A stretch of 64,000 nucleotides of DNA from Pecten maximus (lineage: Eukaryota), in the NCBI RefSeq assembly GCF_902652985.1, contig NC_047021.1:42718001-42782000 (forward strand). The letters are read 5' to 3'. Positions 10,301 through 43,526 of this stretch are shown piece by piece (position 1 is the first letter of the stretch; each line of letters starts with the position of its first letter). The position numbers and the translations under genes are program-made. Under the pieces are notes generated by a model. The model was not told the DNA's origin and did no database searches. It worked only from the letters and a program-made list of their open reading frames with translations.

Positions 10301-13300
10301 TCCCTTGTTATCTTTCTCTCCACAGGTTCTGTTTCCATCTTACTCTCTACAAAACAAGAATAAATTCAATTTGGTAACAGAGTTGTTATACAAGGAAAAT
10401 ATCTACTCCATGGGAAACTCAAAAGAGATTTGTCAAGCTATTTTTCAATGTGAAATACAAAACAGCATTGACATAGCCCTAAGAATTTTAGTTTTTCTTT
10501 TGTCCTGGAAAATTACTGTGTACATTGAATGCATGGAAGGTGCACATCAGTTGTTATCTAAATCATTATTCATAGCATGATACAAAGTAAAACATTTACT
10601 ATCAGCGAATTATTCCTGAAATATGGACACTGTTCGATCAGAAATATTAGGATACTTATAATGCAGAGGTTGGGAAGAGCAATTAGCACTGCGTTAAGAA
10701 CACATATTGGCCATTTGCTATTCAAATATATATAAAGACTTCAAATTTTCTATCTATAATCCAGAACTCCAAGGTCTAACCCTGTCCTTCCCGATCCCGG
10801 ATATGGTAGACAATATTAGTTCATACATACCAGACACAGGGCTGGGCTGAGACACCTCTCCTTCCTTGTTGGAAACCTTTTTGTCCCCCTGTTCTGCCTG
10901 TTGTTTCTCCTCCACTGTAGGCAGCGTCAGCATAATGGGGCGCCTGTTACCGGTCTCTTCATTAACCTGAAGCACAACATTTTGTCACATGTACTACAAC
11001 AGTCACCTGTTCATATGATTCTCAACTCTTTCAGCTTGTATTTATAACGAAGAGTATGAGAGAAGAAAAGTCTCCAAAATTAATTTTTCCTTTTTATGGC
11101 CCATTGACAGTTGAAATAAAATTTGGTTTATTTTGTTTAACATCCTATTAACAGCCAGGGTCATTTAAGGACATGCCTGGTTTTGGAGGTGGGGGAAAGC
11201 TGGAGTACCCGGAGAAAAACCACCGACCTACAGTCAGTACCAGGCAACTGCCCCACGTGGGTTTTGAACTCGCAACCCAGAGGTGGAGGGCTAGTGATAA
11301 AGTGTTGGGACAACTTAACCGCTCCGCCACCACGGCCCCCTTGAAATTACACATCCTCCATTTTCCTAAAAAAAAAGTAGAGCACTACCACAATAAAACT
11401 TGATTGATTTTAGCCGAGTCCCATTAATGGGATTAAAACTTGGTAAAGAAGCTGAATGATCTTACCTGCATCATTGTGTTAAAATGAACTGTGTACCTCC
11501 TCCTGCCAGCTTGAAACCTACAAACCAGAGCATCAATATAACATCTGTCAATATAGCAAAATTATAGAGGAGAAACAAATGTGTTCCCAAACATGTACAG
11601 GGCGTAATACTCCCCCATAATGATGGACATGTGACCGGTCAGTGTTCATTACCACAAATGGACCAAACTTTTGTGTTCCTGACATGTATAGAACATCGAC
11701 TTACAAATTAGTATGCCAATTTCAGTAAAATAGATACATCCCACAGGAGGAATTAGAAATTTGTTCTAGGCATGGTAGGTGTAGGAGAAAACGTTTATTA
11801 TTATATGGTCCTGTTTTGATGAATCACTTCTTTCAGTGAACCTTGAGTGCAGTGTTTGCTGGGATACCCTACAGTAAACCTTTAATACCGACACACCTGT
11901 TGGTGTTACGAGACGTAACCAGTTAATACCGACACACCTGTTGGTGTTACCAGACGTAAACAGTTAATACCGACACACCTGTTGGTGTTACCAGACGTAA
12001 ACAGTTAATACTGACACACCTGTTGGTGTTACAAGACGTAACCAGTTAATACCGACACACCTGTTGGTGTTACAAGACGTAACCAGTTAATACCGACACA
12101 CCTGTTGGTGTTACAAGACGTAACCAGTTAATACCGACACACCTGTTGGTGTTACAAGACGTAACCAGTTAATACCGACACACCTGTTGGTGTTACAAGA
12201 CGTACCTGATGCTGGACTCTCCGGCCTGGTAAGCATCGTCAATTGTCTTATTGTTACCCAGGCTGTATTTACACCAGCGCCCTGTGCTATCATCAAACCA
12301 CTTCCATGTGTGACTGGCCGCCTGTCAAAATTAAATAACTCAATTTGCTATCAAAATTTAAAATGACAGTTATCTATGGCGTTTTAGATGATTTGGGGGA
12401 AAACAAAAATTTGTCACAGATTTAATTGGTATCACAAGTTCTACTTCCTTTCCTCAGTCACTACCAATATATCATCAAGGATAATATGACATATGCTTGT
12501 CTATGATATACTCATCACTGGAAAGTTTCTGCGACTCTGATCATATTCAAGATGTAAAATAGAATTAGGATCTATTTTGAATTGTTGTGTTTTAAAACAA
12601 AAACGTGTATAAAGTATTACATTTGTGTTTCCCCTTTGTATTAAGTTTTTTAATAGAGCCTGCTAAGACAGTTGGAACACACACACACACCAATTGAAAG
12701 AGAAACTTACCAGTAATTTCTCGGCATCCACCTTGCGTCTCGATATCACAGATACTTTTTCATACAGGTCCAACAATAGCAGTAGAGGAGCTAACCATCT
12801 GAAACACAAAGTTCAATAACTGAAAGTGCTATAAACTACAATTTCAATAGTCATATCGCCAACTCGCATTCTATACAATTTCATTTTCAGAAACATTCAA
12901 AAGCATTCTAAACCTTCAACTGAATGTCTATCGACTAATCTTCCATTGGCCACTACCAATATATCATCAAAGCTATTATGACATATGCTTGTCTATGATA
13001 TATTTATTACTGGAAAGATTTTGATATTTAATCTGGAAATTTTTTTATAGTTAGTACAATATTTGAGAAATTTTATACATTATCAAAATCCTAAATCTCT
13101 AGAATTCTGCCACTTTTCAACACTTTATTATTATTATTATTATTTTCATCTTTCCTCAGTCACTACCAATATATCATCAAGGATATTATGACATATGCTT
13201 GTCTATGATGTATTCATCACTGGAAAGTTTTTGATATTTAATCTAGCAGATTTTTTGAAAGTTGAATGCAAATACTTGAGAAATTGCCACTTTTCAATGC

Positions 13301-16300
13301 TTTACTATTTTTTTCTTACCTCAGTCACTACCAATATATCAATAATCTAATTATCTCTAGAATTCTGCTACTCTTTTTACACCTTATTTTTTTCGAATAT
13401 ATAATGAGAAGATTTTTAAAAGTTAGTACATACATTTGAGAAATTATATATCTTACTAAAATCCTAAATCTTTAAATTCTGCCACTTTTTAAAGGTTTAT
13501 TCATTTTTTCTTTATCTTTCCTCAGTCACTACCAATATATCATCAAGGATATTATGACATATGCTTGTCTATGATATATTCATCACTGGAAAGTTTTGGA
13601 TACATAATTGGGGAGATTTTTAATAGCTAGAACACAAATTTGAGAAAATACATACTTATCTCTAGAATTCTACTACTTTTTTTACACTTCATTTTTTTCG
13701 GATATTTAATTAGAAGATTTTCAATAGTCAGTACATACATTTGAGAAATTATTTACCTTATTATAATCCTACATATCAAGAATTCTGCCTCTTTTTAACA
13801 CTTAATTTCTTTTTCGCTCTTTCCTCAGTCACTACCAATATATCATCAAGGATATTATGACATATGCTTGTCTATGATATATTCATCACTGGAAAGGGCT
13901 TTGAACTGGATATTATGTCAATTCTGTTACTGAATTCATAATCCATGTCACTTTTCCCTTGTGTGTCATTTGTACAATCTATTGAGATATATGTGTGGTT
14001 AGCGCTGCTGGTAGATTTTTTAGTCTAAAAGGTTTGCCATTACCCTGCATGTCACACATATTGATTAGGGGATTTATACAGCTCCCATTCATTTTAGGCC
14101 CCTGTTCTGACTTTTCTTCTGGTTCTCCTCACTGTTTGCCCCGGACATCACTACAACTAATCTGTATGAAGCATATTCTTTTACTAAATTCATACATAAA
14201 GGCGCTATTAAACGGTCCATCTTTTGTACAATTTTTTGTTGGACTAGCTCATCACGGTTTTGATTTTGAAGTCTGAGAGTACTGTTACAGTACTTTCGTA
14301 TGACATATTTTTCTGTTGGGCTCAGGGCGACTTATTTTGGAAAGATGATAAAAGTTCAGCAATCAATATAACTTTTCCTCAGTCACTACCAATATATCAT
14401 CAAGGATATTATGACATATGCTTGTCTATGATATAATCATCACTGGAAAGATTTTGGATACATAATTGGGGAGATTTTTAATAGCTAGTACACAAATTTG
14501 AGAAAATACACACTTATCTCTAGAATTCTACTACTTTTTTTACACTTCATTTTTTTCGGTTATTTAATGAGAAGATTTTCAATAGTCAGTACATACATTC
14601 CAGAAATTATATACCTTATTATATAATAACCCTACATATCAAGAATTCTGCCTCTTTTTTACACTTAATTTCTTTTTCGCTCTTTCCTCAGTCACTACCA
14701 ATATATCATCAAGGATATTATGACATATGCTTGTCTATGATATATTCATCACTGGAAAGTTTTTGATATTTAATCTAGCAGATTTTTTGAAAGTTTGATG
14801 CAAATATTTGAGAAATTGCCACTTTTCAATGCTTTACCATTTTTCTTCTTACCTCAGTCACTACCAATATATCAATAATCTAATTATCTCTAGAATTCTG
14901 CTACTCTTTTTACACCTTACTTTTTTCAAATATTTAATTAGAAGATTTTTAAAAGTTAGTACATACATTTGAGAAATTATATAACTTATTATCCCTACAT
15001 ATCAAGAATTCTGCCTCTTTTTTACACTTAATTTCTTTTTCGCTCTTTCCTCAGTCACTACCAATATATCATCAAGGATATTATGACATATGCTTGTCTA
15101 TGATATATTCATCATTGGAAAGGGCTTTGAACTGGATATTATGTAAATTCTGTTACTGAATTCATAATCTAAGTCACTTTTCCCTTGTGTGTCATTTGTA
15201 CAATCAATTGAGATAGCTGGGTGGTTAGCGCTGCTGGTAGATTTTTTAGTCTAAACGATTTGCCATTACCCTACATGTCACACATATTTATTCGGGGGTT
15301 TATACATCTCCCATTCATTTTAGGCCCCCGTTCTGACTTTTCTTCTGGATCTCCTCAATGTTTGCCACAGGCATCACTACAACTAATCTGTATGAAGCAT
15401 ATTCTTTTACTAAATTCATACGTAAAGGCACTTTTAAACGGTCCATCTTTTGTACAATTCTTTGTTGGACTAGCTCATCACGGTTTCGATTTTGAAGTCT
15501 GAGAGTACTGTTACAGTACTTTCGTATGACATATTTTTCTGTTGGGCTCAGGGAGACTTATTTTGGAAAGATGATAAAAGTTCAGCAATCAATATACTAG
15601 TAACCTTTCCTCAGTCACTACCAATATATCATCAAGGATATTATGACATATGCTTGTCTATGATATAATCATCACTGGAAAGGTTTTGCTAAACTCCAAG
15701 TTTCTCTACAGGTACAGCAAATCTGACAGTAACAAGACACAATCAGATGTAACTGCGAACATAGCCTTTACGAGAAACGTTTTATGTAAGCTTGAAAAGG
15801 CTACAAATGGGTCCCATGTCCAGTGACTGAGCGGAATCAAATTCATCGAATTTAAAAGATAACATATAGTTCACATCTCATGGGGGGAAATAACATTCAT
15901 AAAGTACATGTCTGCCAAAAATTTTAAATACTAATGAGACAGGATAAGATTATGCATACTAATTCCAATGGGAAGGGCACTTCGAGTTAAATTTAGTAGA
16001 CAATTCTTTGAATGTTTAGAGTAGAAAGACATTGAGTGGCTTGTACAAGACAGTCTGTGTTAGGTGAAGAGTAACTTACTTTGGGGAAACATAATCCCGA
16101 TTGGCAGTGAGGAACTCCTGTCCACTACTGAGCACTTGTACCAGGAGGTCTGTAAGGTAGGCTTTCTCCACGGCCTCAGCACAAGGCATCCTCGCCTCCT
16201 ACAACAAGTTAGTACAACATAAACAACATATCTAAAGCAGACTTTCTCTATGGTCTCAGCATAAGGCATCCACACCTACATCTACCAGTAAGTTAACAGC

Positions 16301-19300
16301 ATAACTAAGTAGTTCATGGCTAATTTATGCCTGTAATTATATCACAGACTTCACATTCTTCCTATTCTGTGAAAATAGAACACAATACTTATCCAGAGGT
16401 TTTTTTTGAAACCTCTTACCTCAAACAGCAGACTGAACAGATGAAGTCGTGTGGCAAATTTGCAAGAGTCAGGATGGAACGCCTTCTTGTTGTTAGGACC
16501 GGACTCCTCAGATGAAGCGACATGGCCCACTGACAATAACTTCTGGCCTAGAGACTGAACCTGAAATACAAATGTAACACCTGTCAGTGTACTAATTACA
16601 AACGTAACACCTGTCAGTGTACTAATTACAAATGTAACACCTGTCAGTGTACTAAATACAAATGTAACACCTGTCAGTGTACTAATTACAAATGTAACAC
16701 CTGTCAGTGTACTAATTACAAATGTAACACCTGTCAGTGTACTAAATACAAATGTAACACCTGTCAGTGTACTAAATACAAATGTAACACCTGTCAGTGT
16801 ACTAAATACAAATGTAACACCTGTCAGTGTACTAATTACAAATGTAACACCTGTCAGTGTACTAATTACAAATGTAACACCTGTCAGTGTACTAAATACA
16901 AATGTAACACCTGTCAGTGTACTAATTACAAATGTAACATCTGTCAGCGTACTAAATACAAATGTAACACCTGTCAGTGTACTAATTACAAATGTAACAC
17001 CTGTCAGTGTACTAATTACAAATGTAACACCTTTCAGTGTACTAATTACAAATGTAACACCTGTCAGTGTACTAATTACAAATGTAACACCTGTCAGTGT
17101 ACTAAATACAAATGTAACACCTGTCAGTGTACTGAATACAAATGTAACACCTGTCAGTGTACTAATTACAAATGTAACACCTGTCAGTGTACTGAATACA
17201 AATGTAACACCTGTCAGTGTACTAATTACAAATGTAACACCTGTCAGTGTACTAATTACAAATGTAACACCTGTCAGTGTACTAATTACAAATGTAACAC
17301 CTGCCAGTGTACTAAATACAAATGTAACACCTGTCAGTGTACTAAATACAAATGTAACACCTGCCAGTGTACTAATTACAAATGTAACACCTGCCAGTGT
17401 ACTAATTACAAATGTAACACCTGCCAGTGTACTAATTACAAATGTAACACCTGTCAGTGTACTGAATACAAATGTAACACCTGTCAGTGTACTAATTACA
17501 AATGTAACACCTTTCAGTGTACTAAATACAAATGTAACACCTGTCGGCGTACTAATTACAAATGTAACACCTGTCAGTGTACTAATTACAAATATAACAC
17601 CTGTCGGCGTACTAATTACAAATGTAACACCTGTCAGTATACTAATTACAAATGTAACACCTGTCAGTGTACTAAATACAAATGTAACACCTGTCAGTGT
17701 ACTAAATACAAATGTAACACCTGTCAGTGTACTAAATACAAATGTAACACCTGTCAGTGCACTAATTACAAATGTAACACCTGTCAGTGTACTAAATACA
17801 AATGTAACACCTGTCAGTGTACTAATTACAAATGTAACACCTGTCAGCGTACTTATTACAAATGTAACACCTGTCAGTGTACTAATTACAAATGTAACAC
17901 CTGTCAGTGTACTAATTACAAATGTAACACCTGTCAGTGTACTAATTACAAATGTAACACCTGTCAGTGTATTATACAGCCATTGATATAATAAATATCC
18001 TTATCCAAGAATAATTTAAACAGTTTACTCTATACAGTATTCATCTGGCCTTACCTCCTGTACAAGTGAGGACAGAACTCGTTTCTGCCATTCCAGTCCG
18101 TTTCTTTGAGTGACGACTATCAACAGGTCACAAACACGATACACTGTTTCCGGGAGAGTGTCCAGCAGGGTCAAACAACCTAAAACACACAAGATTTTCC
18201 TTAAAACTCAGCAGGGTCAAACAACCTAAAACACACAAGCTTTTCCTTAAAACTGATCTTCATAGTTTATTCTGGGTACACATACCTTGATAGACCAATT
18301 TTCAATCTAGATCAATCCTAAACAAATCTGATTATTACCTAACAATGTTCCATGTTCCATCAGGGAACTCACTTATCCTTGTGGCTACTTCACAACACTA
18401 TTTTGGGCTTTCCTCAGTTACTATCAATATATCATCAAGAATATTATGACATATGCTTGTCTATGATATAATCATCACAGGAAAGTCATCTTTGTTTTAC
18501 CTTGATAATTAAAATTCTATTAAGAACAGCTTTTTGACAAAATGTCCAATTTACCAAAAACCTTGAGAAGATTTTTCTCACATTCAAGTATAACTTCATG
18601 AAAGTGCCGATGTTTAAGCTTTTTTCTCACATTCAAGTATAATTTCATGAAAGTGCAGATGGTTTAAGCTATCATTTTGAACGATTTTAAAGGAATGGGA
18701 AAATGCACAGCTTACAAACTTTTCAATGCTATTTACGATTCTTATCTGATTAAATCTACCCTAGTGCAAAACACCAAACTTGCATGTAATCATATCAATA
18801 ATTCCCTAGCTTTCAGTGTTAAAATATCGAAATGTTGCTGATTTTGACCAGATTTTATTTAAGTTCTTCTTTCCTCAGTTACTATCAATATATCATCAAG
18901 GATATTATGACATATGCTTGTCTATGATATATTCATCACTGGAAAGTTATTAATGTTTAATCTGGATGACTATTAAATAACAGCATACATTTTTGAGCAA
19001 ATACAAAACATAACAATAATTTAGAACTTCCCAACACTAGGACTATACAGTCAAACCTGTCTATAGCGACCGCCCAAGGGGAGGCAGAAAAACGGTCACT
19101 ATAGACAGGTTGCCTTTATAGACAGTTCAAAATTATTGCACCAACCAATTTACTTAAAACTGCCATAAATAAATTGTCATTGAACAGGGCATTCAGAAGA
19201 CCAGTCAGAAGTTAAATAAATGCATAAACTTTATACATCTGAAGGGTTTAATATTTAATGATTTGTGGACCCAAACACAAAATATAACTCAAAATGGTCT

Positions 19301-21592
19301 TATGGATAATTTTTTTTTGAATATTTTGTTCTGAAATAATGCTATATGTATCTATCAAATTATCTCCCTTTCTTTCATAAATAAAGAAAAAGAATACACA
19401 ATAATTAATTAATTATATTTGTGTTACTACTAATTATTTTGTGTTATAGTCTTACTTCTTAAAACCAAATTTTTTTTTTCTGACCCAAATTGAAATCCGG
19501 ATATTTGTGTCAGTTAACGACTTTTTATTAGTATTGACTAATTAAAGATGGCGGCAGTACAAACGCTAGTACCGACAGCTACGATTAAGAAAGGCATTAT
19601 TGGCTTTCATGTGAGTAAATCTTGTTGACAGATATGACCAGTGTTTGTTATTGAAGTGATGTATCCTAGTTGTAATCACAAAATTAATTGACCGTGTCAA
19701 ATGAAGCCACCTGTTCACAGTTGTAATGTAATACCGACACGCATGGTGACCCGACTCCTCTCTTACCGAGCCCCAGGCCAGGGCAGCTACAGTAATTATA
19801 GGCTAAAAGGTGGTAGGGGTCTTTTGTTTATATACTCAGGCCAGGGTTGTGGTGGTCCTTTGTTTGTATAATCAAGCCAGGGTCGATGTGTCTGAATTTT
19901 CCGGGGATTTTATGAGGGATGACTGCCGAGAGCAGAAGATGGCTGACAGAAATCGGTCGCTATAGAAAACAAATTAGCGACCGCCGTTCCAAAATCACCG
20001 GTCGTTAGCCACATTAGACAGGTAGTCGCTATACAGAGGGTCGTTATATAGTAAAATCTCACGGGGAATCTTAAAACCGGTCGTTATAGACAGGCAGTCG
20101 TTATATACAGGGGGTCGTTAGAGCAGGTTTGACTGTATCTTTTTTTTTTTTAATGTTCATTTTAATTTAAAATGGCAATGATTTTCATACAGTTGTTGGA
20201 AATGTTGACAAAACCTTTTCTGCTTACTCAATTATCATAACCATGCCTCTTTTTTTTTAGATTTAATAAATCAGAAGGTTCTTAAACTTCACATCCAACT
20301 TAAAATTTTGAATCCTCAGCAGACACGAGATTATTAAAGTTCACGCTTCTCCTTAAGAACAAAGTTTGTAAGGGACAGCTACATCGTAATGGCTTTCAAA
20401 GCACAAAACTCACATGTATTCATATCAATAATTCCCTAGGCTACAGTGTTAAAATGTCAAAATGTTGCAGATTTTGAAAAGATTTAATGCAAAAGTTCTT
20501 TCCTCAGTCACTACCAATATATCATCAAGGATATTATGACATATGCTTGTCTATGATATATTCATCACTGGAAAGTTAGTATAGATGTTTAATATGAATG
20601 ACTATTAAATAACAGCATACATTTTTGAACAAATACAAAATGTAATAATAATTTAGAACTTCTCAACACTAGGCCTATATCTTTTTTTTTAAATATTTTA
20701 ATATGTTCATTTTAATTTAAAACGGCAATGATTCTCATACAGTAGAAGGAAAGATTCTCATACAGTAGAAGGAAATGCTGACAAAACCTTTTCCGCTTAT
20801 TCAACCATCATAACCATGCTTTTTTTGTACATTTAATTAATCAGTAGGTTCTGAAACTTCACACCCAACCTAGCATTTTGAATCTTCAGCAGACACAATA
20901 TAATTAAAAGTTCACAATTCTTCTTAACAACAAACTTTGTAGGAGACTGTTACATTATAATGGCCTTTGAAGCCAGGAAACTCTCACCCTTCCTCAGTCA
21001 CTACCAATATATCATCAAGGATATTATGACATATGCTTGTCTATGATATATTCATCACTGGAAGGGTTTCGTCAGTTAAATTTTGTAACAGTCACTTATC
21101 AAACAGGCAATTCAGTAGAGCCGATAATTTCTTTGGTGTAAACTTTCACGATGTGTCACAAATTGCGAATTTATTTCATGCAAACAATTAAAATATTATT
21201 GAGAAAAGATCTAATTTCATAACAGAATAATAACAGTTTAATCTTTCAATCTTCTCTAATGAAACTTGAACAACAATATATACCAATACATAACCATGTC
21301 TTCAGCATTAAAACACCAAAGGAGATACAGACCTGGCATGACCGTGTCCGTGAACTGGTCAATCGTAGTTCGATCAAGTGGTTCCTCTTTCTCCTGCTTT
21401 TCATCAACTTCTGGCTCCTCTGGCCTCGGAGGATCTTGTTTGGGTGATGAACAAGTTGGTCCACCCTACAGCAAAGATATTAGGCATTAAATACATCTAT
21501 TGCTTTACAACATACAATGTATATAATGTGCTTTCACAGCTATTTCAAATTGTTTGTGATTTCACCAAAAGATCTCTTCCCACACCCCCTGC

Positions 21593-21626
<34 letters not shown>

Positions 21627-21831
21627 TTTCAAATTTTTTACACCGTAAATTTTCTTGATAGTTTCTGGTTCTATAAACATCTCTTCAAGGATAAAATTTT
21701 CTGGGTTAAAACAGGGTAGGGTTTAGAGTACCAACCTCATCAGTAGACATGAGGACATTGTCTCCCAGCGACATAGCTATAGCTCTCATCATCTGGTCTT
21801 CCTCAGACATCTCCAGTACCATGCCGAGGGG
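1375..21831 (-). CDS. HUWE1: E3 ubiquitin ligase HUWE1, central block (UIM, WWE, armadillo-like region, acidic disordered region); continues off the left edge towards the HECT domain
   Basis: 23 GT-AG exons with consistent phases: 21736-21831 ([17 protein letters not shown]), 21333-21465, 18055-18179, 16420-16560, 16080-16198, 12711-12798, 12206-12321 and 11466-11517 (WWE: [15 protein letters not shown]...[12 protein letters not shown]), 10831-10966, 10250-10346, 9586-9826 ([15 protein letters not shown]), 8985-9171, 8342-8500, 7834-7985, 6973-7188, 5995-6550 ([14 protein letters not shown]...[10 protein letters not shown]), 5062-5207, 4788-4887, 4292-4441, 3620-3741, 3152-3275, 1930-2043, 1375-1573 (ATHPLL). 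Motifs recognised from human HUWE1. Confidence 0.95.
5362..5982. repeat. Intronic minisatellite of ~28-32-bp CCCTA-rich units
   Basis: Repeated ATTCCCTAAAACCCCTATCTATCCCTGTAACAC variants. Confidence 0.9.
9846..10185. repeat. Intronic minisatellite of ~23-bp units (AGAAAACCTGTCTAAACTGAC)
   Basis: Direct tandem repeats beginning at CAGTGAAACCTGTCTAA. Confidence 0.9.
11124..11340 (-). mobile_element. tRNA-derived SINE (V-domain-like), full length
   Basis: Minus strand: GGGGCCGTGGTGGCGGAGCGGTTAAG (A box), GAGTTCAAAAC (B box), central GGTTTTTCTCCGGGTACTCCAGCTTTCC, A-rich tail. Paralogs at 26540, 33849/43347 and 57236. Confidence 0.85.
11881..12204. repeat. 41-bp minisatellite (~8 copies) abutting a 5' splice site
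   Basis: Unit TTAATACCGACACACCTGTTGGTGTTACAAGACGTAACCAG. Confidence 0.95.
12448..12525 (-). ncRNA. C/D box snoRNA, SNORD27/snR74-like (18S Am27/28 guide), copy 1
   Basis: Minus strand: CTTTCC stem, C box GTGATGA, guide AGACAAGCATATG (antisense to 18S CAUAUGCUUGUCU), C' TGATGA, D box CTGA, GGAAAG stem. Confidence 0.85.
12940..13017 (-). pseudogene. Degenerate SNORD27-like snoRNA copy
   Basis: Guide is intact, but the C box reads GTAATAA and the D box is lost. Confidence 0.75.
13150..13227 (-). ncRNA. C/D box snoRNA SNORD27-like, copy 2
   Basis: Same 78-nt unit with intact C and D boxes, 18S guide and terminal stem. Confidence 0.8.
13516..13593 (-). ncRNA. C/D box snoRNA SNORD27-like, copy 3
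   Basis: Intact boxes, guide and stem. Confidence 0.8.
13819..13896 (-). ncRNA. C/D box snoRNA SNORD27-like, copy 4
   Basis: Intact boxes, guide and stem. Confidence 0.8.
14373..14450 (-). ncRNA. C/D box snoRNA SNORD27-like, copy 5
   Basis: Intact boxes, guide and stem. Confidence 0.8.
14682..14759 (-). ncRNA. C/D box snoRNA SNORD27-like, copy 6
   Basis: Intact boxes, guide and stem. Confidence 0.8.
15045..15122 (-). ncRNA. C/D box snoRNA SNORD27-like, copy 7
   Basis: C box variant ATGATGA (still RUGAUGA); guide, D box and stem intact. Confidence 0.8.
15605..15682 (-). ncRNA. C/D box snoRNA SNORD27-like, copy 8
   Basis: Intact boxes, guide and stem. Confidence 0.8.
16561..17970. repeat. 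30-bp minisatellite, ~47 copies, starting at a HUWE1 3' splice site
   Basis: Unit ACTAAWTACAAATGTAACACCTGTCAGTGT, highly homogeneous. Confidence 0.97.
18408..18485 (-). ncRNA. C/D box snoRNA SNORD27-like, copy 9
   Basis: Boxes, 18S guide and stem intact; substitutions mainly upstream of box D. Confidence 0.8.
18869..18946 (-). ncRNA. C/D box snoRNA SNORD27-like, copy 10
   Basis: Intact boxes, guide and stem. Confidence 0.8.
19048..20135. mobile_element. Non-autonomous Tc1/mariner(pogo)-type DNA transposon with TA TSD
   Basis: TIRs CAGTCAAACCTG...CAGGTTTGACTG flanked by TA. The paralogous empty site (AGGCCTATATCTTTT) is visible at ~20671-20685. Confidence 0.9.
20498..20575 (-). ncRNA. C/D box snoRNA SNORD27-like, copy 11
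   Basis: Intact boxes, guide and stem. Confidence 0.8.
20987..21066 (-). ncRNA. C/D box snoRNA SNORD27-like, copy 12
   Basis: Intact boxes and guide; the terminal stem shows a compensatory change (CCCTTCC/GGAAGGG). Confidence 0.85.
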
Positions 21832-22208
21832 CTGCAATACAATGATAGATTAACATCAGAAATATTGATCACAGGAAACATCAGCTCAAGGGAAATATGA
21901 ATTAATTACAGGAAACATCAGATCAAGGGAAATATGAATTAATTACAGGAAACCCGAGCAGGATCCTTTTACTTAATGGTAACAGAATAACATACTCTAC
22001 AGTAATAATTTCAAATAATCATTTGTTCTGTCAAAATGGTTTTGGATAATTTCTCCTCTTGTCGAAAACGTTTATTTGTGATGTTCTTAATTGTACGAAA
22101 GTGCTAGAAATGACCATGGATAGAGCTCTAAGAATAAAAATTTGGCCACTGAAGTGTTACATTAATTTTTGACTGACCATTTCTAGTAATACAGGTTGTT
22201 ATATTTGT

Positions 22209-22284
22209 CCTTCCTCAGTTATTATCAATATATCATCAATAATATTATGACATATGCTTGTCTTTGATGTTCATCACTGGAAAG
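22209..22284 (-). ncRNA. C/D box snoRNA SNORD27-like, copy 13 (most diverged)
   Basis: C box, D box and the AGACAAGCATATG guide are retained despite substitutions and a small deletion. Confidence 0.75.
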
Positions 22285-22639
22285 AGTAGATACTATGCCA
22301 TCATATGTAAATGGTATCTTTCTTACACATAAGGACCAAAATAATGCAGCGGTTATTTACAGAGATGGATCAAGTCCACGGTAGAAGACTGTCTTAACAG
22401 CTATGATTCTCTATGTCAGGGGGATTTAACAATATTTTTTTAAGATTATAGCAAGAAATCTGTATGCACCATCTATTTTACGTAAATTCATAGATACTTG
22501 TAATTGAACATATTATATATTATTTTTATAAATCTGAAGGTTAAAAATCTTATTAAAAAGACTTCCATAAAAATCCGGAATAAAGAGATTTTTTTGAGGC
22601 CGACAAACACTCAGATGGTGTAAGAGATACAAGTATTTT

Positions 22640-23425
22640 TTTTTTTTGTTCTGAAATATTACTAAATGTATTTATCAAATTATCTCCCTTCTTTTTAAAT
22701 AACAACAAAGAAATACACAATAATTAATGAATTATGTTATTGTTACTGCTAATTATTTTTGTGACATAAACTAATTTCTTCAAACCAAAAGTTTTGTTTT
22801 TTCTGACTCAAATTGAAATCTGGATATTTGTGGCAGGTTACAACTCTTTATTAGTATTGACTAATCAAAGATGACGTCAGTACAAACCTGTTACCAGCTA
22901 GATTCAAGGCTTACTGCTTTTAGTAGTAATCTTGTTGACAGATATGACCAGTTTGTTCTGGAAATTGTAATCCAGAATCACATACTGTAGTCAAATGAAG
23001 CCATCTATGCACAGTTGTAATGTTACACACCAACACGCATGGTGAGCCAACTCCTCCGGGCCCCAGGCCAGAGCAGCGACAGTAATTTTAGGCTAACAGG
23101 TGGTAGAGGTCTTTGTTTATATAATTAGGCCAGGGTTGTGGGGGTCTTTTGTTTATACAAATCAGGCCAGGGTCGATGTGTCTGAATTTTCTGGAGATTT
23201 TATGAAGGATTAGTGCCGAGAGCAGAAGATAGCTTACAGAAATCGGTCGCTATGGAAAACAAATGAGCGACCGCCGTACCAAAATCACCAGTCGTTAGTC
23301 ACATTAGACAGGTGGTCGCTATACAGAGGGTCGTTATATAGTAAAATCTCACGGTGAATCTTAAAATCAGTCGTTATAGACAGGCGGTTGTTATATACAG
23401 GTGGTCGTTAGAGCAGGTTTGACTG
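22640..23425. mobile_element. Second, left-truncated copy of the Tc1/pogo-type element at 19048
   Basis: Colinear similarity to ~19310-20135, ending in GAGCAGGTTTGACTG-TA. Left boundary approximate. Confidence 0.85.
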
Positions 23426-24274
23426 TAAATCATGTTTATAGATATTGTCTCTGGCATTTATTCCATGAAGTCTATAGAATTTTCTAAACAAATTAAGATT
23501 AAATCATACTTGTCCAACAATGTCCAAATTTTTACCAAAGGTGGCTGAAAAATGAACGTTGAAAATCTAGTTATAGTAACAATGACTTCAGATTTGACCC
23601 AAGGTGATTGAAACGTGAATTTGAGCAAGAGGTAAATGTATAAAGTTTCAGAACAATTGGATCATCATTGACGTAAGTAGAGTGAGGACGTTGTCTAATT
23701 ACGTACATTTGATCCTATCTTTATCCCATCACTGACTCAACTCAAGAGGACAATACAGTAAACACTATTTGCACAGATACAATTAAATGCAGTTTCTTGA
23801 TTTTTATTGTTTGGACCAAATTTTCACTTCGTATTATTAGAGTTTTTTTAGTTTTCCAAATTTGAGTTTTCTGATTTTTTTTTACTAGGATAAAGAGAGA
23901 ATTCGGCCGGGACTGACGGAGTACTTCAAGTTAAGCGAGGTATTTGAGATTTCCGAGTTCGAGCTAACAAAGTTCTACTGTATATATTATTTTATCACAG
24001 GGGGATTCACCCTGCATACCTTTCATTATCCATACTAAACACTTATCACCAACCCACTACCTTTGAACTGGTGTTAGCTCTACTTTGATTTTTAATCTTT
24101 ATTTTATATATAATACATATTAATCGGTTCATTAATCTTTGACATGAAGTCTAAAGAAGATCTTTTATGTTGCTCAAAGAAGATCTGAGATTCAGACATA
24201 TTCACTAACGCTCACAATATCACAAGACCTCTAAATGGGTTAATCATGACGGACAATAACAAGCTTGTACAAAC

Positions 24275-27129
24275 CTTCTTGCCTTTGTCCTCCTTATTGT
24301 CCACATAAAACTCAAAATGCAGTGTTGTGGCACTTGTAGGAAAGTTCTGAAATCAACAAACATATCCCATAATAGACTTTCAACTTTATCTGATAATAAA
24401 AATACATTTCTAATGAAAAATGTCCACTACGATGACCATTATTAGATAAAGCACCAGCAGGGCGAGAAAAATTTCAGATCTGATGGCTCATGGCCAGTTG
24501 GTTTGATTGGTGGAGAAAAAAATATTGGTCATTACTTGCAGGAAAGACAACTAGAATTTTCTTGCAGTTTTTTGCTTTTTCTTTTGAGAAATTGACGATG
24601 CTACTAATTTGGTTTAAATTTACTACTAATTTTCTCCTTTTGGCAAGTAGTTTTGAAACCAATCTTGCCCAAAGGGGCCAGTGATGCTGAAATTATATTC
24701 TTCCCCTGACAAGTGCATCAAAACAACATTCCATAATGCTGTGTAGTCCCCATAAACCTTTAAATCCTACAACCTTTATAAAGCGAGATTTCTTACTGGC
24801 AAAATACTTATCCAAAAGGGATGCATTGTACTTACGGAGATTGGGTCATTACTGCAGCACTCAGAAAGACCAAAACCATTGTCTTTACCGCCCCAACTCT
24901 GTCAGAAAACAAAAGTCATAATGTAAACGATATGATTTAAAATACAGCACAGTGCCAGAGCAACTTGACACTGGAGTTTCACACCAGTAAGGAATAGATG
25001 AACACAGCTAGTTCCTATTCTCAGTATTTTCTTCCAGTCAGAATGACATTATTTTGGATATGAAATATTCTTGCTTACCTCCGCTAAGTGTGTCAGTCTG
25101 ACAATCAGGCCTTGTTTCTTGTCACTGCTCAGGCGAGTTATGTGGTTAGATCTTTTGCTGCAGAAAAAAAAAAAAAATTCAAATGAACATGCAGGCCTAT
25201 TTTGTTGTTGTTGATGTTTTAGCAGATCTTCTTGAATTCTGACAGAGATTTGTGAATATTGCTCATCAATTTTTTTTCTTAATTCTGAGAGATGTGTGAA
25301 TGTTGCCTATCAAATCATCTTTGGAAATGTTGCTTATCAAATCTTCTTTGGAAATGTTGCTTATCAAATTTTCTTTGGAAATGTTTTTCTTAATTCTGAG
25401 AGATGTGGGAATGTTGCTCATCAAATCTTCTTACCTAAAAACATATAGAAGGTTGAGCACCGCCAGAACCACAGTCATATCAGATGAGGACAATAGACAT
25501 GTCAGATGTTCCATGGAGTTGTAAAGATGGCGAGAGAAACTGTGCTCGATCAGCAATGATGTGAAGTGTAGAATCACCAATAATAGGTCCTTCAACTGTA
25601 TCAAAGAAAACATTCAGGTCAGCAGCAAGCAACAAATGTACATCCTAATTAACTTTTCATTGTCTTTCTTAAGTGTAGAATAAAAAGGAAATTGTGAACA
25701 ACACAGAATCTCAAGTACCCAATATATACCTTCATATGCAGATCTCTTTTAATAATAACATTTAACATTAGTAACGAAATTTAGTAAATTTCCAAACCTG
25801 TTCCTCGCCGGATCTGTCACAGGACAACATCCATTTTTTCTCGCCTTCTTTTTTGCATGCCCTTTCCAGGACCTCGTCAAACTTATCCAAAACATCTGAC
25901 CAGTGGTATAACTCGCACTACATAAATGTAAAATGACAAACGTTATCTCCAAGGCTTCTGATCCAATGACTACAGATATGTAAAATAAATACATATACAA
26001 ACACTGCCTCCTTCAACCCCGAGCCCTTGCTAAAATATTACTGAATAAATGTAACCCAAGTCTCCCATTAATCAACAAAGATTGCATCCTTTTATCAGTA
26101 TGCTACTATCACTACAAAACACAAATGTATCAACATAAATCATGTGGATCAATCCTACTGAAAATCGATTGGTTTACACTAACCAATTTTTTCCGGTCAT
26201 CAATGCCGAAATTTTAACTGATTCTCATCACTAACAATATTTGAATCTGTTACCATCTACAATTTTCAATTGTCTAATATAATCCTTGAAATACTAATAC
26301 AACCCTACCTTTCCATAAGACCAGGCCTTTACTGCTCTCAGTTCCTCCAGAAGAGTCTCCTCTGTAGCGATCTTTAGCTTTTCAATGAGGGCCCGACAAT
26401 CTGCAGGCTTCAAAACACAAAGGGATTTTTCAAATTACTTTCCATGACAATTCATATTATTTTAGTAGTAGAAAAATACCACTGCATTCTAACTTCATCT
26501 CCAGGTTACTTTCAGACTTCCTTTTTAACTCTTTTTGGATTGGTTTAAGTTTATAACGTCCAATTAACAGCCAGGGTCATTTAAGGACGTGCCAGGTTTT
26601 GGAGGTGAAGGAAAGTTGGAGGACACGGAGATAAACCACCAGCCTACGGTCAATACCAGGCAACTGCCTCACATGAGTTTTGACCTCGCGACCCAGAGGT
26701 GGAGGGCTAGTGACAGGGATTTTCTTACAATTTTTCAACTGGGTCCAAAGTCCATTGAATTAGGAATTTCTATGTGACAAAATGTGACATTGGGAAAAAC
26801 AAAAATAGTGAAATTCATACAAATTTCAGTTTTTCTTTTATAACTATGGTCTTTATATTATTTTCGATTTCATTTTGTTATCTGTTCTTATTTTTTTAAA
26901 TTGCCTTAATATATGTTTTTTATATAAAACATACTGTATCATTCAAAAGCGACTTCAAAATTAGGAGTTTTTATTTTTCAGGGGCAAATTGGGAATTTTC
27001 ACAAGATTTTTTTAGGGGAATGGGTTTCAATATTCTAATTCTTGCATTTTGCCTGTAAAACAAAAATAATCAAACAGTACTTACCACCTCTGTAGTAGAC
27101 TTTTTCAATTTATTTCTGTCGATCTTCAT
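24275..27129 (-). CDS. HUWE1: E3 ubiquitin ligase HUWE1, N-terminal 213 aa (7 coding exons)
   Basis: ATG at 27129 ([10 protein letters not shown]). Exons 27085-27129, 26309-26407, 25798-25917 ([14 protein letters not shown]), 25435-25595 ([18 protein letters not shown]), 25079-25157, 24836-24898 ([11 protein letters not shown]), 24275-24346 (ATTLHFEFY). These match the conserved HUWE1 N-terminus. Confidence 0.95.
26540..26715 (-). mobile_element. tRNA-derived SINE, 5'-truncated copy
   Basis: Similar to 11124-11340 but lacks the A-box head. Confidence 0.8.
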
Positions 27130-35619: not shown

Positions 35620-38600
35620 TCACTCTTCTTTCTGAATACATTTGACAATGTTGGAAATGAAACATTTCTGTATTTTATTTTCACATAAAATTACTTTCAC
35701 TCCAGAGATAGCATTCCTGCTGTATGCCAGTTTCAAGTGATTGAAATGGATACCATTTTTGGACAATTTCTCAGCTGATAATTTGTTCATGGCTTTCTTG
35801 CTTACCAAGGTGTCATAAGACTTTTTACAAGATAAAAAGTTCATACTGAACACATCGTCAACTGACCACTTTGCACTCATTTTTAAGTTAAACAAGTCTT
35901 GGAGGGCTTTCACATCAAAAACTGCATTGTGTGCCTCATACGACATCCCAAGGAACTTCCTTACCAACGATTCTTGGCTGTGAGATCCAACCTCCTTCTT
36001 GGGAAACAAGCGTCTTGCTAACCTAAGAGTGTCCATATATCCTTTTACAACATTGGCAAATGACGAGCATAACTGGAACTCTCTCAATCTGTTTGTAAGG
36101 ATAGGTATATCAAACGATGCTGCATTATGACCAACAAGAATAGGATTGGGGAGAGTTTTCAAAAAATCTAAGAAATCCAACAAAGCTGAATGGATGGAGG
36201 TCACATTTTCAATCTCCTTTCCCCTGAGGTACATCTTACTTAATGACCTTGAATAGGTCAGTCCTGTAACTTCTGATGCTTTGATTGCTATGTCACACCT
36301 TGGCAGGACATATCTATGAAAAATATTGTCACCATTAACAACAGCAGCAATTTGAGTAATGTCACTTTGACGTGAAGCAGAAGTTGTTTCCAAATCAAAG
36401 AAAACCAAAGATTTGGATTCATCCAAGGACAATACTGATGGTATAGTTTGTACATCTGGATCACTACTGTTGTTAATGGTTAGATCAATATCAGTTTCAT
36501 AGGTAGTACCTTCCTTTACATATGATGACTGTTCTTTCAACCTTTTTTTCCGTTTCAACTCAACCCTTCTTAATTTGTATTCTCTGGTCTTTTCCTTTTC
36601 TTTACGGGCTGACCGAGCATTGTCCAATTTTGTTGTCAGTTTGACGGTGAACTCGCCAGGGGAAAGAAGGGCCGATTCATTTACCTGTGACAAAATATTA
36701 TTATTTATTACATATGCATATACAAGGAGACAATTCAGCGAATTACAAAACATATGTGACAAGTAGTGTAAGAGATAGAACCGGCTGACAAGTTAAAGTG
36801 TGGAAGGACAAGGTGATCCCATGCTGCAAGTATGAAGTTCCAGTGACAAGTAGTGTAGAAAATGGAACGAAGACAAATTTGTTCTTTGATGTAGATAAAG
36901 CTCAAAATGTAGGTCAGAGTAACCTAATTTTATACATAACAATACCTCACCAAAGTGATCCATGTCCCAAATATATGTTATGTGGCTAAAACCAATTAAG
37001 CATCGATATATTACCTGTTATACTTAGAAATTGCCAGGTTATAGACAATAATTCCACGGGGAATAGAAATATTATGTTAAATCAATGAATTTGTTGTAAG
37101 CATGTTCGTTATAACGTATTTTATTGTATATGAGTAAACTTTATAGCACTGGATAGAGCTAGAAGAAGTTGTTAAAAAGGAAAAACTAGACAGATGAAGG
37201 ACGCTGCATCAACACCATAAGCTCACAGACACTTTGTGTCAGGTGAGCTAATAATGTGTATGCATAATTAACAGGAAACAAATTCCAATTGTGAAGATGT
37301 ACATTAAAATTAGCATTGGTATGAGACCATGAGAAGTCTGACATAGGGAATTGAATTATACAGGAAATTGTATTACAACATTTTAAGATCTATATTAAAA
37401 CTTTCGAATGTATGTTGACATGACTTTACTGCAATTGAAAAATAAACTTTACCTTAGGTAAATAATTATGACCTTCATTCTTTTGAAGAACAGATGCAGA
37501 TACCCTATTCATTAATGAATCTGAGCTGCCATAGAATCTGAAAACACAAAATATAAAGCCAGTTGTACACATGAACACAGAACATCAGAAAACTTTGCAA
37601 GATTTCATAGCTTTATAGCTAAGTAGGTCAAGGTCATTTATTTGAGGAAACTTTATAGCACTCCTTCTCAGGCACCCTGGGCCTAATGAAACACGATTCT
37701 TAAAACTTTTACCCATGATAATTCATGTTAACCTTTGACCCTGTCCAGGGCATAAAGCTGACCTTTGAACTAAACACAATATATAAGAAAGGTCAAGGTA
37801 ATTTATATGAGGAAACTTTGTAGCACTCCTTTGCAGGTACCTAAGTACTGGCCAAATATCAGGTTACTGGGTATTACAGTTTTCTAGTGGCCAAATAGCA
37901 GGACCCTGATTATTACAGTTTCTAGAGGAAGTCATTTGAAGGGCAAAAGTGGACAGACTAGCTGATGGACGATGGATGCCGCGTTACGGCATAAGCTCAC
38001 TGGTCATTCGGACCAGGTTAATGATATTAAAGAAATTAGTTTCTTACAACTACTGCAACTCTTACTTGGCTTTCGGTGTTTTTGTGGAAACAAGGCTGTT
38101 AAAACTTTCATTTGCTTGTGTGGAGCCCAAATTCAGGAGGTTTCCAGACCGGCATGAATATTTGGCAACTAGTTCCTCCAGGCGTGTCCTCAGTGTGGGA
38201 TCTTGTAAGGCAGTGCCATTGGGAAGACTTTTGTACCTACATATTCAAATTATATTATTTATATAAATCAATGAATTTTTCTTTTGCATAATTTATAAGT
38301 ATATGCATTGTGTTCAAGTAATATTTAATGGACAAGTTTGTTAAATTCATATGAAACAAGCCTTTGTTGTTTTCAGAATGATTTACATTCAATGATACAA
38401 TATAACTGATGTAGACTTGCAATGTCTGAGGATCAATTATATCCTAATCACTTAGCTTACCCGTTTTCCCATGTAATATATGCCCATGTCATAAATAATA
38501 AATAATTATTGTATTACATATATTATCTAAAATAGTACTATTGTGAGGTCATTAATAAATGACGTCACCCGTCTTGCAGAGAAAAACATTGAGGTTTTTG

Positions 38601-43180: not shown

Positions 43181-43346
43181 GTTGTCGTCTGCGTCTGACA
43201 GCTGTGTGTTATTGTCTGCGTTATAAATACGCTTGACATCGAAGCGTATTTAAGCGTTTAGATGACCCCAGAAAAGAAATAATTTAGAGGTGTTCCGAAT
43301 GTAAAGAGTTATCGTTCCTGATACTCGGATACTAGCTACAACGTCC

Positions 43347-43521: not shown

Positions 43522-43526
43522 AACCC

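What the first reader, a model, noticed from the sequence alone, without database searches (positions are those of the whole stretch)
12448..22284. Amplified intronic cluster of 13 SNORD27/snR74-type C/D snoRNAs in HUWE1, up to 7 per intron
Seen: a 78-nt unit recurs 13 times intact, plus 1 box-mutated copy and 2 fragments (~13319, ~14852), all sense to HUWE1. They lie in four introns with 1, 7, 4 and 1 copies. Each has C, C' and D boxes, a terminal stem and AGACAAGCAUAUG, complementary to the conserved 18S 5' sequence CAUAUGCUUGUCU. The +5 rule from a non-canonical D' box (CAUA) selects yeast A28 / human A27. Established: animal intronic snoRNAs are usually one per intron, and human SNORD27 is hosted by SNHG1/UHG, not HUWE1. 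Inference: either several snoRNAs are released from one intron (needing endonucleolytic processing, as in plants and yeast) or this is a birth-and-death array with one active copy per intron.
Basis: partly seen in the sequence, partly recalled or inferred. Interest (0 to 1): 0.75.

Follow-up and report, generated by a model that had tools for sequence, protein, structure and literature searches.

The report
Multi-copy SNORD27-type snoRNAs in HUWE1
Four introns of a scallop's HUWE1 gene carry thirteen well-preserved copies (seven in one intron) of the ancient small RNA that guides a methyl mark near the start of 18S ribosomal RNA; this packing is unusual for an animal, but it is a known kind and recurs in this genome.

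Summary
On the minus strand, sense to a HUWE1 gene, there are 13 intact 78-nt box C/D units, 1 copy with ruined C and D boxes, and 2 half copies.

- **Target:** the 13-nt guide pairs perfectly with nt 25-37 of this genome's own 18S. The fifth-nucleotide rule from the D' position (CAUA) selects A28, the snR74/SNORD27 site.
- **Family score:** Rfam SNORD27 scores are 35-44 bits, below the gathering score of 52.
- **Intron counts:** spliced contigs from public runs show that a 389-nt intron holds 1 copy and one 3,281-nt intron holds 7 intact copies. Protein continuity with human HUWE1 puts 4 more in one 3,152-nt intron.
- **Genome-wide:** no further SNORD27-type gene turned up in the 918-Mb genome.
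- **Constraint:** no variable column falls in the guide, D' or C', while the flanks have decayed to background.
- **Not shown:** expression as a small RNA, and how several copies leave one intron.

The layout matches the intronic snoRNA gene clusters described in rice and Drosophila. The scan found similar arrays before on other DNA of this genome, and I confirmed one (three SNORD18 copies in one RPL4 intron). Verdict: real, probably functional, a new member of a known kind.

The parts
12448..12525 (-). Intact snoRNA copy; the only copy in intron 12322-12710
   Evidence: 35.1 bits RF00086; 114 bits R1. Intron from the spliced joint.
12939..13017 (-). Decayed copy: C box GUAAUAA and D box CCAA, but guide, D' and C' intact. 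It is the copy nearest the 3' splice site (140 nt).
13150..13227 (-). Intact copy, seven-copy intron
13321..13354 (-). 3'-half fragment (model positions 45-78)
   Evidence: 22.9 bits, E 0.037.
13516..13593 (-). Intact copy, seven-copy intron. Core identical to the copies at 13819, 14682 and 20498.
13819..13896 (-). Intact copy, seven-copy intron
14373..14450 (-). Intact copy, seven-copy intron; the outermost stem pair is C-A
14682..14759 (-). Intact copy, seven-copy intron
14854..14887 (-). 3'-half fragment (model positions 45-78)
   Evidence: 22.9 bits, E 0.037.
15045..15122 (-). Intact copy, seven-copy intron; C box AUGAUGA
15605..15682 (-). Intact copy; the 5'-most copy in the seven-copy intron
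18408..18485 (-). Intact copy, four-copy intron
18869..18946 (-). Intact copy, four-copy intron
20498..20575 (-). Intact copy, four-copy intron
20988..21065 (-). Intact copy, four-copy intron; its stem carries a compensatory U-A to C-G change
22209..22284 (-). Most divergent intact copy (76 nt) with the best Rfam score; lies in the intron upstream of the UIM exon
   Evidence: (43.7 bits).
12322..12710 (-). Intron of 389 nt holding 1 copy
   Evidence: Joint in X1, X2 and X12; GT..AG read.
12799..16079 (-). Single intron of 3,281 nt holding 7 intact copies, 1 decayed copy and 2 fragments
   Evidence: Joint 12798 to 16080 in X1, X2 and X12, with CT..AC on the plus strand.
18180..21331 (-). Intron of 3,152 nt holding 4 copies, inferred from homology and splice sites
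   Evidence: the exon ends in ...MPG and the next exon begins CLTLLD..., contiguous with human HUWE1 around residue 1445.
21832..24274 (-). Intron holding the copy at 22209. The 3' end is set by the acceptor; the 5' end is only inferred.
   Evidence: Scan note s1-792459 names the same span.
12206..12321 (-). HUWE1 exon, first part of the WWE domain
   Evidence: spliced contigs; Pfam WWE, E 9.4e-6.
12711..12798 (-). HUWE1 exon between the one-copy and seven-copy introns
16080..16198 (-). HUWE1 exon upstream of the seven-copy intron
18054..18179 (-). HUWE1 exon matching human residues 1445-1488
   Evidence: E 3e-8.
21332..21465 (-). HUWE1 exon (acidic linker)
   Evidence: splice sites. No PDB match of its own.
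21736..21831 (-). HUWE1 UIM exon matching human residues 1367-1390

Best explanation
This is the genome's SNORD27/snR74-type box C/D snoRNA gene family: 13 competent copies and 3 remnants, amplified by local tandem duplication inside four neighbouring introns of HUWE1, all in the host's sense.

Inferred mechanism:
1. The copies are transcribed as part of the HUWE1 pre-mRNA.
2. Each C/D kink-turn, closed by the 6-bp terminal stem, is bound by the core snoRNP proteins.
3. The introns are spliced out and the RNA is trimmed to the protected 78-nt units. For the seven-copy and four-copy introns this also needs cuts in the spacers, or yields longer snoRNP-capped intermediates.
4. The 13-nt guide upstream of the D' position pairs with 18S nt 25-37, and fibrillarin 2'-O-methylates A28.

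What is shown: the sequence anatomy, the guide-target match with the genome's own 18S, the intron structure, sense orientation, no further copy found elsewhere in the genome, and sequence constraint across copies. What is inferred: expression, snoRNP assembly, the processing route, the methylation itself, and the idea that many copies make up for a host gene that is not a high-output ribosomal gene.
For: - Family match: 13 SNORD27 hits at E 3.6e-5 to 4.6e-3, full model length, all on the minus strand.
- Anatomy: C, C' and D boxes and the stem are present in 13 of 14 full-length copies.
- Stem: 77 of 78 stem cells pair, with one compensatory change and one wobble.
- Target: the guide pairs 13/13 with own 18S nt 25-37, and the fifth nucleotide upstream of the D' position faces A28. 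The same site is listed for snR74 and SNORD27.
- One intron, seven copies: joint 12798 to 16080 seen in 3 of 4 runs.
- Genome-wide: the only convincing matches in the 918-Mb genome are these copies. R1 finds 14 of 14 here, the RF00086 top 13 are here, and the exact C-box-plus-guide pattern hits 13 of 14 here with 0 reversed-pattern control hits. The 14th pattern hit has no D box and no Rfam match.
- Constraint: 0 of 22 variable columns fall in the 24 guide + D' + C' columns across all 14 copies (P = 5.5e-5).
- Core versus flanks: mean core identity is 0.954 over 78 pairs, against flanks of 0.48 and 0.51 and a background of 0.40. In 48 of 78 pairs both flanks are below 0.60 while cores average 0.945.
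- Recent duplicates: 55/1027 flank mismatches versus 6/468 core mismatches.
- Not an assembly artefact: independent runs cover each of the seven spacers at 97-100% identity, and a tested spacer is unique to this locus.
Against: - No small-RNA evidence. Only Logan contigs were available, and the bin holding the single-copy intron's snoRNA (12419-12609) has zero depth in all 4 runs.
- All Rfam scores are below the gathering score.
- The D' position reads CAUA, not CUGA.
- From the coordinates, no copy lies close to a 3' splice site (127, 351, 228 and 377 nt for the nearest intact copies), although position relative to the branch point is said to matter for C/D processing (passage in PMC13736004).
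- The literature says two snoRNAs in one intron can yield sno-lncRNAs rather than free snoRNAs (passages in PMC11028025).
- No strong hairpins that could mark endonuclease sites were found in the spacers.
- Four copies have identical cores, which gene conversion or recent duplication could explain as well as selection.
- The constraint tests treat columns and pairs as independent, which they are not.
Confidence: 0.72

Rival explanations
1. Birth-and-death array. Only one or a few copies (for instance one per intron) yield mature snoRNA. The rest are silent passengers kept similar by recent duplication and gene conversion.
For: - One copy has lost its C and D boxes, and two are half copies.
- Four cores are identical.
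- Blocks of about 1.5 kb are recent tandem duplicates, with flanks 89-97% identical.
- The copy at 20498 has flanks like the copy at 18869 but a core identical to copies in another intron, which hints at conversion.
- Inner copies may be trapped between snoRNPs (PMC11028025 passages).
Against: - 48 of 78 pairs have background-level flanks yet cores about 94.5% identical.
- No change in guide, D' or C' in any of the 14 copies.
- There is a compensatory stem change.
- The decayed copy shows how fast boxes mutate once constraint is lost.
Confidence: 0.18
2. The multi-copy introns mainly give stable long intron-derived RNAs capped or studded by snoRNPs (sno-lncRNA-like), with a role beyond rRNA methylation. 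This does not exclude the main reading.
For: - In X1, X2 and X3, which all hold spliced HUWE1 contigs, near-identical contigs cover spacers of the seven-copy intron. Depths are 2-9 versus 2-3.7 for exons in X1, 5-20 versus 22.7 in X2, and 6-18 versus 8.4 in X3.
- The unique parts of introns 11518-12205 and 12322-12710 have zero depth in all four runs.
- The spacer tested is unique to this locus.
Against: - Contig depth is a poor measure, and the tool itself warns that a hole proves nothing.
- Coverage also lies outside the outermost intact copies (15753-16053 and 12975-13151), which a strict sno-lncRNA would lack.
- The one certain RNA library (X12) has only one intron contig.
- X1-X3 are labelled RNA only by guess.
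Confidence: 0.25
3. Retroposed or transposon-borne snoRNA copies (snoRT-like) that happened to land in HUWE1.
For: For distant pairs, homology ends at the stem boundaries.
Against: - All 16 pieces are on one strand within 10 kb.
- None was found elsewhere in the genome.
- There are no A-rich tails in the 3' flanks.
- Neighbouring copies share long tandem blocks.
Confidence: 0.03
4. Assembly artefact: a collapsed or inflated repeat.
For: The region is repetitive. One contig in X2 joins 14817 back to 13086, so arrangement or copy number may differ between individuals.
Against: Contigs from three other data sets cover each of the seven distinct spacers with few differences. The intron's ends are confirmed by spliced contigs.
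Confidence: 0.03

Closest known systems
Human SNORD27 (U27), Rfam RF00086
   Same: Box C/D snoRNA. It has the same guide core upstream of D', the same target (18S A27 in human numbering) and the same order of boxes. It gives a full-length alignment to the Rfam model (Table 3 of PMC6466398).
   Different: Scores are below Rfam's gathering score. The D' position reads CAUA instead of CUGA. The host is HUWE1 rather than the non-coding SNHG1. There are 13 copies rather than one, and up to 7 per intron.
Yeast snR74 (guide for 18S Am28)
   Same: Same modified nucleotide; this genome's 18S 5' end has the yeast numbering (table in PMC5699541).
   Different: Not intronic. From my recollection only, snR74 sits in the polycistronic snR72-78 unit cut by Rnt1; no call checked this. 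No match to a yeast-type family appeared.
Intronic snoRNA gene clusters of rice and Drosophila
   Same: Several snoRNA genes inside one intron of a host gene, in the sense orientation (passage in PMC2780460 citing Liang 2002 and Huang 2005).
   Different: Here all members are paralogues of one family, in a lophotrochozoan, in HUWE1. I could not read the primary Drosophila paper (PMC1370813 is not held), so numbers per intron there were not compared.
sno-lncRNAs and the SNORD115/116 tandem arrays of mammals
   Same: Tandemly amplified C/D snoRNA paralogues. Introns with two snoRNAs give snoRNP-capped long RNAs (passages in PMC11028025).
   Different: Those arrays mostly keep one snoRNA per intron of a non-coding host and are orphan guides. 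These copies have a canonical rRNA target and sit in a coding gene. A capped long RNA is not shown here.
Other snoRNA arrays in this same genome
   Same: Three SNORD18-type copies lie in one RPL4 intron, with four in the gene. Five SNORD14-type copies lie within 10 kb. Unchecked scan notes report eIF4G with 8 in one intron, KANSL2 with 8, PABPN1 with 5 and CK2alpha with 5 H/ACA copies.
   Different: This cluster has the most intact copies among those listed, and no copy of its family was found outside it.

Membership tests
Box C/D snoRNA | C box RUGAUGA near the 5' end and D box CUGA near the 3' end | tested here: met
   13 of 14 full-length copies have both. The copy at 12939 has GUAAUAA and CCAA.
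Box C/D snoRNA | Short terminal stem bringing C and D together | tested here: met
   6-bp stem with 77 of 78 cells paired, one compensatory change and one wobble. Covariation is too sparse to be significant: 74 of 500 shuffles reach it.
Box C/D snoRNA | Internal C' and D' boxes | tested here: inconclusive
   C' UGAUGAU is invariant. The D' position reads CAUA in all copies, which matches CUGA at 2 of 4 letters.
Box C/D snoRNA | Accumulates as a 60-120 nt RNA bound by fibrillarin, NOP56, NOP58 and SNU13 | not testable with these tools
   Only assembled contigs were on offer. They cannot show a small RNA or its ends.
SNORD27 (Rfam RF00086) | Score at or above the curated gathering score (52 bits) | tested here: not met
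   35.1-43.7 bits for the 13 copies; no hit in the gathering scan.
SNORD27 / snR74 functional class | Guide upstream of D' complementary to the 18S 5' region, placing A27/A28 at the fifth position | tested here: met
   13 of 13 bp with own 18S nt 25-37, with A28 at position 5. The guide is invariant in 14 of 14 copies.
SNORD27 / snR74 functional class | 18S A27/A28 is 2'-O-methylated in this organism | not testable with these tools
   Needs RiboMeth-seq or primer extension.
Intronic snoRNA gene cluster (rice/Drosophila type) | Two or more snoRNA genes within one spliced intron, sense to the host | tested here: met
   Joint 12798 to 16080 in X1, X2 and X12 encloses 7 intact copies. A second intron with 4 copies is inferred by homology.
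Intronic snoRNA gene cluster (rice/Drosophila type) | Individual mature snoRNAs released from the shared intron | not testable with these tools
   No small-RNA data could be laid.
sno-lncRNA | Stable RNA bounded by two snoRNAs of one intron | tested here: inconclusive
   Intron spacers are present in runs that hold spliced HUWE1 contigs while neighbouring introns are empty. However, coverage also lies outside the outermost intact copies, and contig depth is unreliable.
snoRNA retrocopies (snoRT) | Dispersed copies with A-rich tails and target-site duplications | tested here: not met
   All copies are local and co-oriented, none was found elsewhere, and there are no A-rich tails.
HUWE1 (host gene) | Sequence match to HUWE1 with its WWE, UIM and DUF908 parts | tested here: met
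   E 2e-50 to human HUWE1 residues 2109-2287 and E 3e-8 to residues 1445-1488. Also UIM, WWE and DUF908. About 1,100 residues between the N-terminal exons and the UIM exon were not found.

The most novel reading that the evidence does not exclude
The 3.3-kb seven-copy intron is not simply degraded after splicing. It persists as an abundant snoRNP-studded intron RNA, either a sno-lncRNA-like species or a polycistronic precursor cut by an unknown animal endonuclease. Together with the other arrays in this genome, this would make scallops a natural system in which polycistronic, intron-borne snoRNA processing is the rule rather than the exception in an animal.
Probability: 0.3. Interest if true: 0.6.

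Novelty: new member of a known kind. Interest (0 to 1): 0.4.

Why it matters
How animals release several snoRNAs from one intron is still open. Reviews describe exonuclease trimming that stops at the outermost snoRNPs and yields sno-lncRNAs, and the endonucleases for co-hosted snoRNAs outside budding yeast are called unknown (passages in PMC11028025 and PMC12508059).

This locus offers seven nearly identical but partly distinguishable copies in one verified intron of a conserved coding gene. One small-RNA data set could therefore say how many copies are used.

It also shows that the guide for a universally conserved 18S methylation has moved from a dedicated non-coding host (SNHG1 in human) to HUWE1. 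There it has been amplified, possibly to raise output from a host that is not a ribosomal-protein-type gene; that last point is inference.

Because similar arrays recur in this genome, the value lies in the genome-wide pattern more than in this single locus.

Tried and rejected
- **Rfam gathering scan of the window:** nothing. The copies appear only at the E-value threshold.
- **Other snoRNA families in the window:** none. The hits near 61.1 kb fall on AT-rich, palindrome-like sequence and match many unrelated families on both strands.
- **Second guide upstream of the D box:** no convincing target in one full rDNA unit. The best match is 10 nt with two G-U pairs at the 18S 3' end/ITS1 border. 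Three copies vary there, so I treat it as an orphan guide.
- **Other SNORD27-type loci in the genome:** the C4 and C12 hits lack boxes. The C17 pattern hit lacks a D box and has no Rfam match.
- **Hairpins in the spacers as possible RNase III sites:** only weak AT-rich pairs.
- **tRNA origin of the deep repeat at 11.1 kb:** none found.
- **Relatives in metagenome contigs by pattern:** 0 hits.
- **Papers and supplements:** the primary Drosophila paper (PMC1370813) is not held. I opened no supplementary files. The supplementary tables of PMC11014333 and PMC11028025 may list which fly snoRNAs share an intron and the fly guide for this site.
- **Spliced model:** I built and searched no joined model. 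Exons were searched one by one.
- **First constraint test:** 0 of 15 variable columns fall in 33 box and guide columns. This test is biased, because 'intact' was defined by the boxes. One search repeats it on all 14 copies using only guide, D' and C'.

Full report
**What is there.**
A direct-repeat search finds a unit of about 100 nt 14 times between 12.4 and 22.3 kb. The alignment shows a near-invariant core of about 78 nt with unrelated flanks.

Rfam at its curated thresholds reports nothing in the window. At the E-value threshold, 13 units match SNORD27 (RF00086) over the whole model, all on the minus strand, at 35.1-43.7 bits (E 3.6e-5 to 4.6e-3; gathering score 52). A 14th unit scores 22.6 bits.

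A covariance model built from the 13 recovers 14 full-length units in the window (90-120 bits). It also recovers two 34-nt remnants at 13321-13354 and 14854-14887 that cover only model positions 45-78.

**Anatomy.**
Each intact unit reads, in order:
- a 6-nt stem strand;
- the C box (G/A)UGAUGA;
- a 9-nt spacer;
- the 13-nt guide;
- one unpaired U;
- CAUA, where the Rfam consensus has the D' box CUGA;
- a 7-nt loop;
- the C' box UGAUGAU;
- a 13-nt second guide region;
- the D box CUGA;
- the other stem strand.

In the stem, 77 of 78 cells pair. One copy (20988) carries a compensatory U-A to C-G change and one (22209) a U-G wobble. With so little variation the covariation is not significant: 74 of 500 shuffles reach it. 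The copy at 12939 has GUAAUAA for the C box and CCAA for the D box.

**Target.**
The genome's own 18S begins like the yeast 18S.
- The guide pairs 13 of 13 with nt 25-37.
- The nucleotide facing the fifth guide position upstream of CAUA is A28.
- A review table lists yeast 18S Am28 as guided by snR74 (PMC5699541, passage).
- Another table lists SNORD27 with 18S-A27 and host SNHG1 (PMC6466398, Table 3 passage).
- The second guide region has no convincing target in a full rDNA unit and varies in three copies.

**Host gene and introns.**
The minus strand encodes HUWE1.
- A 205-aa ORF matches human HUWE1 residues 2109-2287 at E 2e-50.
- Other exons give WWE, UIM, DUF908 and human residues 1445-1488.

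I laid Logan contigs of four public runs on 10700-16400. Spliced contigs define exons 10831-10966, 11466-11517, 12206-12321, 12711-12798 and 16080-16198, all with GT..AG introns on the minus strand.
- Intron 12322-12710 holds one copy.
- The single intron 12799-16079 holds seven intact copies, the decayed copy and both fragments. Its joint is seen in X1, X2 and X12, that is 3 of 4 runs.
- The four-copy intron has no RNA evidence. One exon ends in ...MPG followed by GT at 21331, and the next begins after an AG at 18180 with [15 protein letters not shown]. Together these are uninterrupted against human HUWE1, so 18180-21331 is one intron.
- The last copy lies 377 nt upstream of the acceptor of the UIM exon.

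**No further copy found in the genome.**
- In the 918-Mb assembly, the model finds only these 14 units. Only 150 of about 1.1 million first-look candidates were scored.
- The Rfam model's best 13 hits are these units, and the remaining six score at most 33 bits. The two best of those six were read and lack the boxes.
- An exact pattern (UGAUGA, 4-16 nt, 12 nt of the guide) hits 14 places, 13 of them here, with 0 hits for the reversed control. The 14th, on another contig, has no D box and no Rfam match.

**Constraint.**
- Among the 13 intact copies (78 pairs), core identity averages 0.954. The 150-nt flanks average 0.48 and 0.51, against 0.40 +/- 0.17 for random window segments.
- In 48 of 78 pairs both flanks are below 0.60 while cores still average 0.945.
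- Across all 14 full-length copies, 22 of 78 columns vary and none lies in the 24 columns of guide, D' and C' (P = 5.5e-5 under random placement).
- In six recently duplicated pairs with alignable flanks (seven flank comparisons), flanks differ at 55 of 1027 sites and cores at 6 of 468 (Fisher P = 1e-4; the pairs are not independent).
- The one copy that lost its boxes shows what unconstrained decay looks like.

Against a pure-selection reading, four cores are identical. The copy at 20498 has flanks like 18869 but the core of copies in another intron, so gene conversion probably contributes.

**Origin.**
Neighbouring copies share blocks of 0.3-1.7 kb at 85-97% identity, and all pieces are co-oriented. 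There are no A-rich tails and no copies elsewhere. This points to tandem duplication by unequal exchange, not retroposition. One contig in X2 joins 14817 back to 13086, which may reflect a different arrangement in another individual.

**RNA evidence and its limits.**
All runs offered were Logan contigs, and only X12 is recorded as RNA. X1-X3 are labelled RNA by guess, but each holds spliced HUWE1 contigs. Contigs cannot show a 78-nt RNA. The bin with the single-copy intron's snoRNA is empty in all four runs.

- Contigs break at the snoRNA repeats, yet they cover each of the seven spacers of the big intron at 97-100% identity. This supports the assembled array.
- Their depths are of the order of, or above, the exon contigs in X1, X2 and X3, while the unique parts of the two neighbouring introns have no coverage.
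- The spacer I tested occurs only at this locus.

This hints that RNA from the multi-copy intron persists. Against that hint:
- the tool warns that holes prove nothing and that depth is unreliable;
- coverage also lies outside the outermost intact copies;
- X12 has a single intron contig.

**Mechanism.**
The copies share no upstream sequence that could be a promoter, and all are sense to the host. Expression from the HUWE1 pre-mRNA is therefore the likely route.

Reviews state the following:
- Animals predominantly follow one snoRNA per intron.
- Trimming stops at snoRNPs, so two snoRNAs in one intron can give sno-lncRNAs (PMC11028025 passages).
- The endonucleases for co-hosted snoRNAs outside budding yeast are unknown (PMC12508059 passages).

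No copy sits near a 3' splice site, and I found no strong spacer hairpins. Release of inner copies therefore needs an unknown cut, or the intron yields longer species. This step is inferred, not shown.

**Comparison and novelty.**
[quoted passage not shown] I could not read the primary fly paper.

In this genome the layout recurs.
- SNORD18-type hits form four copies in an RPL4 gene. Three lie between two exons that are contiguous in the protein.
- SNORD14-type hits form five copies within 10 kb.
- Unchecked scan notes report arrays in eIF4G, KANSL2, PABPN1 and CK2alpha.

So the scan has found this kind of thing before on other DNA of this genome. I searched for papers linking SNORD27, snR74 or Me18S-A28 with HUWE1. 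Only two papers held two or more of the four terms, and neither mentions HUWE1. A search on snoRNAs in molluscs listed no paper on snoRNA gene organisation among the 15 shown.

I class the locus as a new member of a known kind: a SNORD27/snR74-type guide family in a new host, in the intronic-cluster layout.

**Unchecked.**
- Conservation in other bivalves (look-up of encoding contigs closed; metagenome pattern scan empty).
- Small-RNA expression.
- Methylation of A28.

Noticed in passing
window 21832-25613: HUWE1 exons for the N-terminal region (DUF908 positions 3-52 at 25431-25613; an exon ending at 24275) lie only 2.4-3.6 kb upstream of the UIM exon, which matches human residue 1367. About 1,100 residues are therefore unaccounted for. 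In the whole genome, DUF908 matches only this one exon and DUF913 matches nothing. This is the subject of scan note s1-792459.
   Followed up: partly
window 11122-11340 (a related stretch near 43250-43552): A dispersed repeat of about 220 nt, SINE-like. The own-genome search gave 6,886 first-look candidates, and the 40 scored are 91-95% identical. It shows contig depths of 1e4 to 6e5 in all four runs. No tRNA and no Rfam match.
   Followed up: partly
window 16414-18000: A 30-bp minisatellite of about 50 units, 95-98% alike, fills most of the intron 16199-18053. It stays open in one minus-strand frame for 549 codons, which is a repeat effect and not a gene. It blocked the first read-laying request.
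   Followed up: no
window 11792-12242: A 41-bp tandem repeat (8 or more units) in the intron just downstream of the WWE exon. Its weakest unit runs into the exon's 3' end.
   Followed up: no
window 18207-18240: A duplication of about 33 nt of the acceptor site plus the first bases of exon 18054-18179 lies just upstream of the real acceptor. It is a possible decoy 3' splice site.
   Followed up: no
window 13086 / 14817: One contig of run X2 joins 14817 back to 13086 with 11 extra letters. This may be a tandem-duplication joint, meaning copy-number or arrangement polymorphism of the array in another individual.
   Followed up: no
window 19324-20137 and 22644-23427: An element of about 800 nt is present in both the four-copy intron and the next intron upstream, at 78-93% identity. 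It is probably a transposon fragment or part of an old segmental duplication.
   Followed up: no
L023 (G000:C9:13921500-13926500): An RPL4 gene with four SNORD18-type hits. Three of them (locus positions 2392, 2886, 3407) lie in one intron, between the exon ending ...AFRNIPG and the exon starting ITLLNVS....
   Followed up: partly
G000:C2:40739008-40748742: Five SNORD14 (U14)-type hits on one strand within 10 kb, at 62-63 bits, just under the gathering score of 64. The host gene was not examined.
   Followed up: no
window 35620-36762 and 46289-47860: Long minus-strand ORFs upstream of HUWE1: one of 380 aa and one of 523 aa. Scan note s1-792041 covers the first as part of a transposon. I did not examine either.
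   Followed up: no
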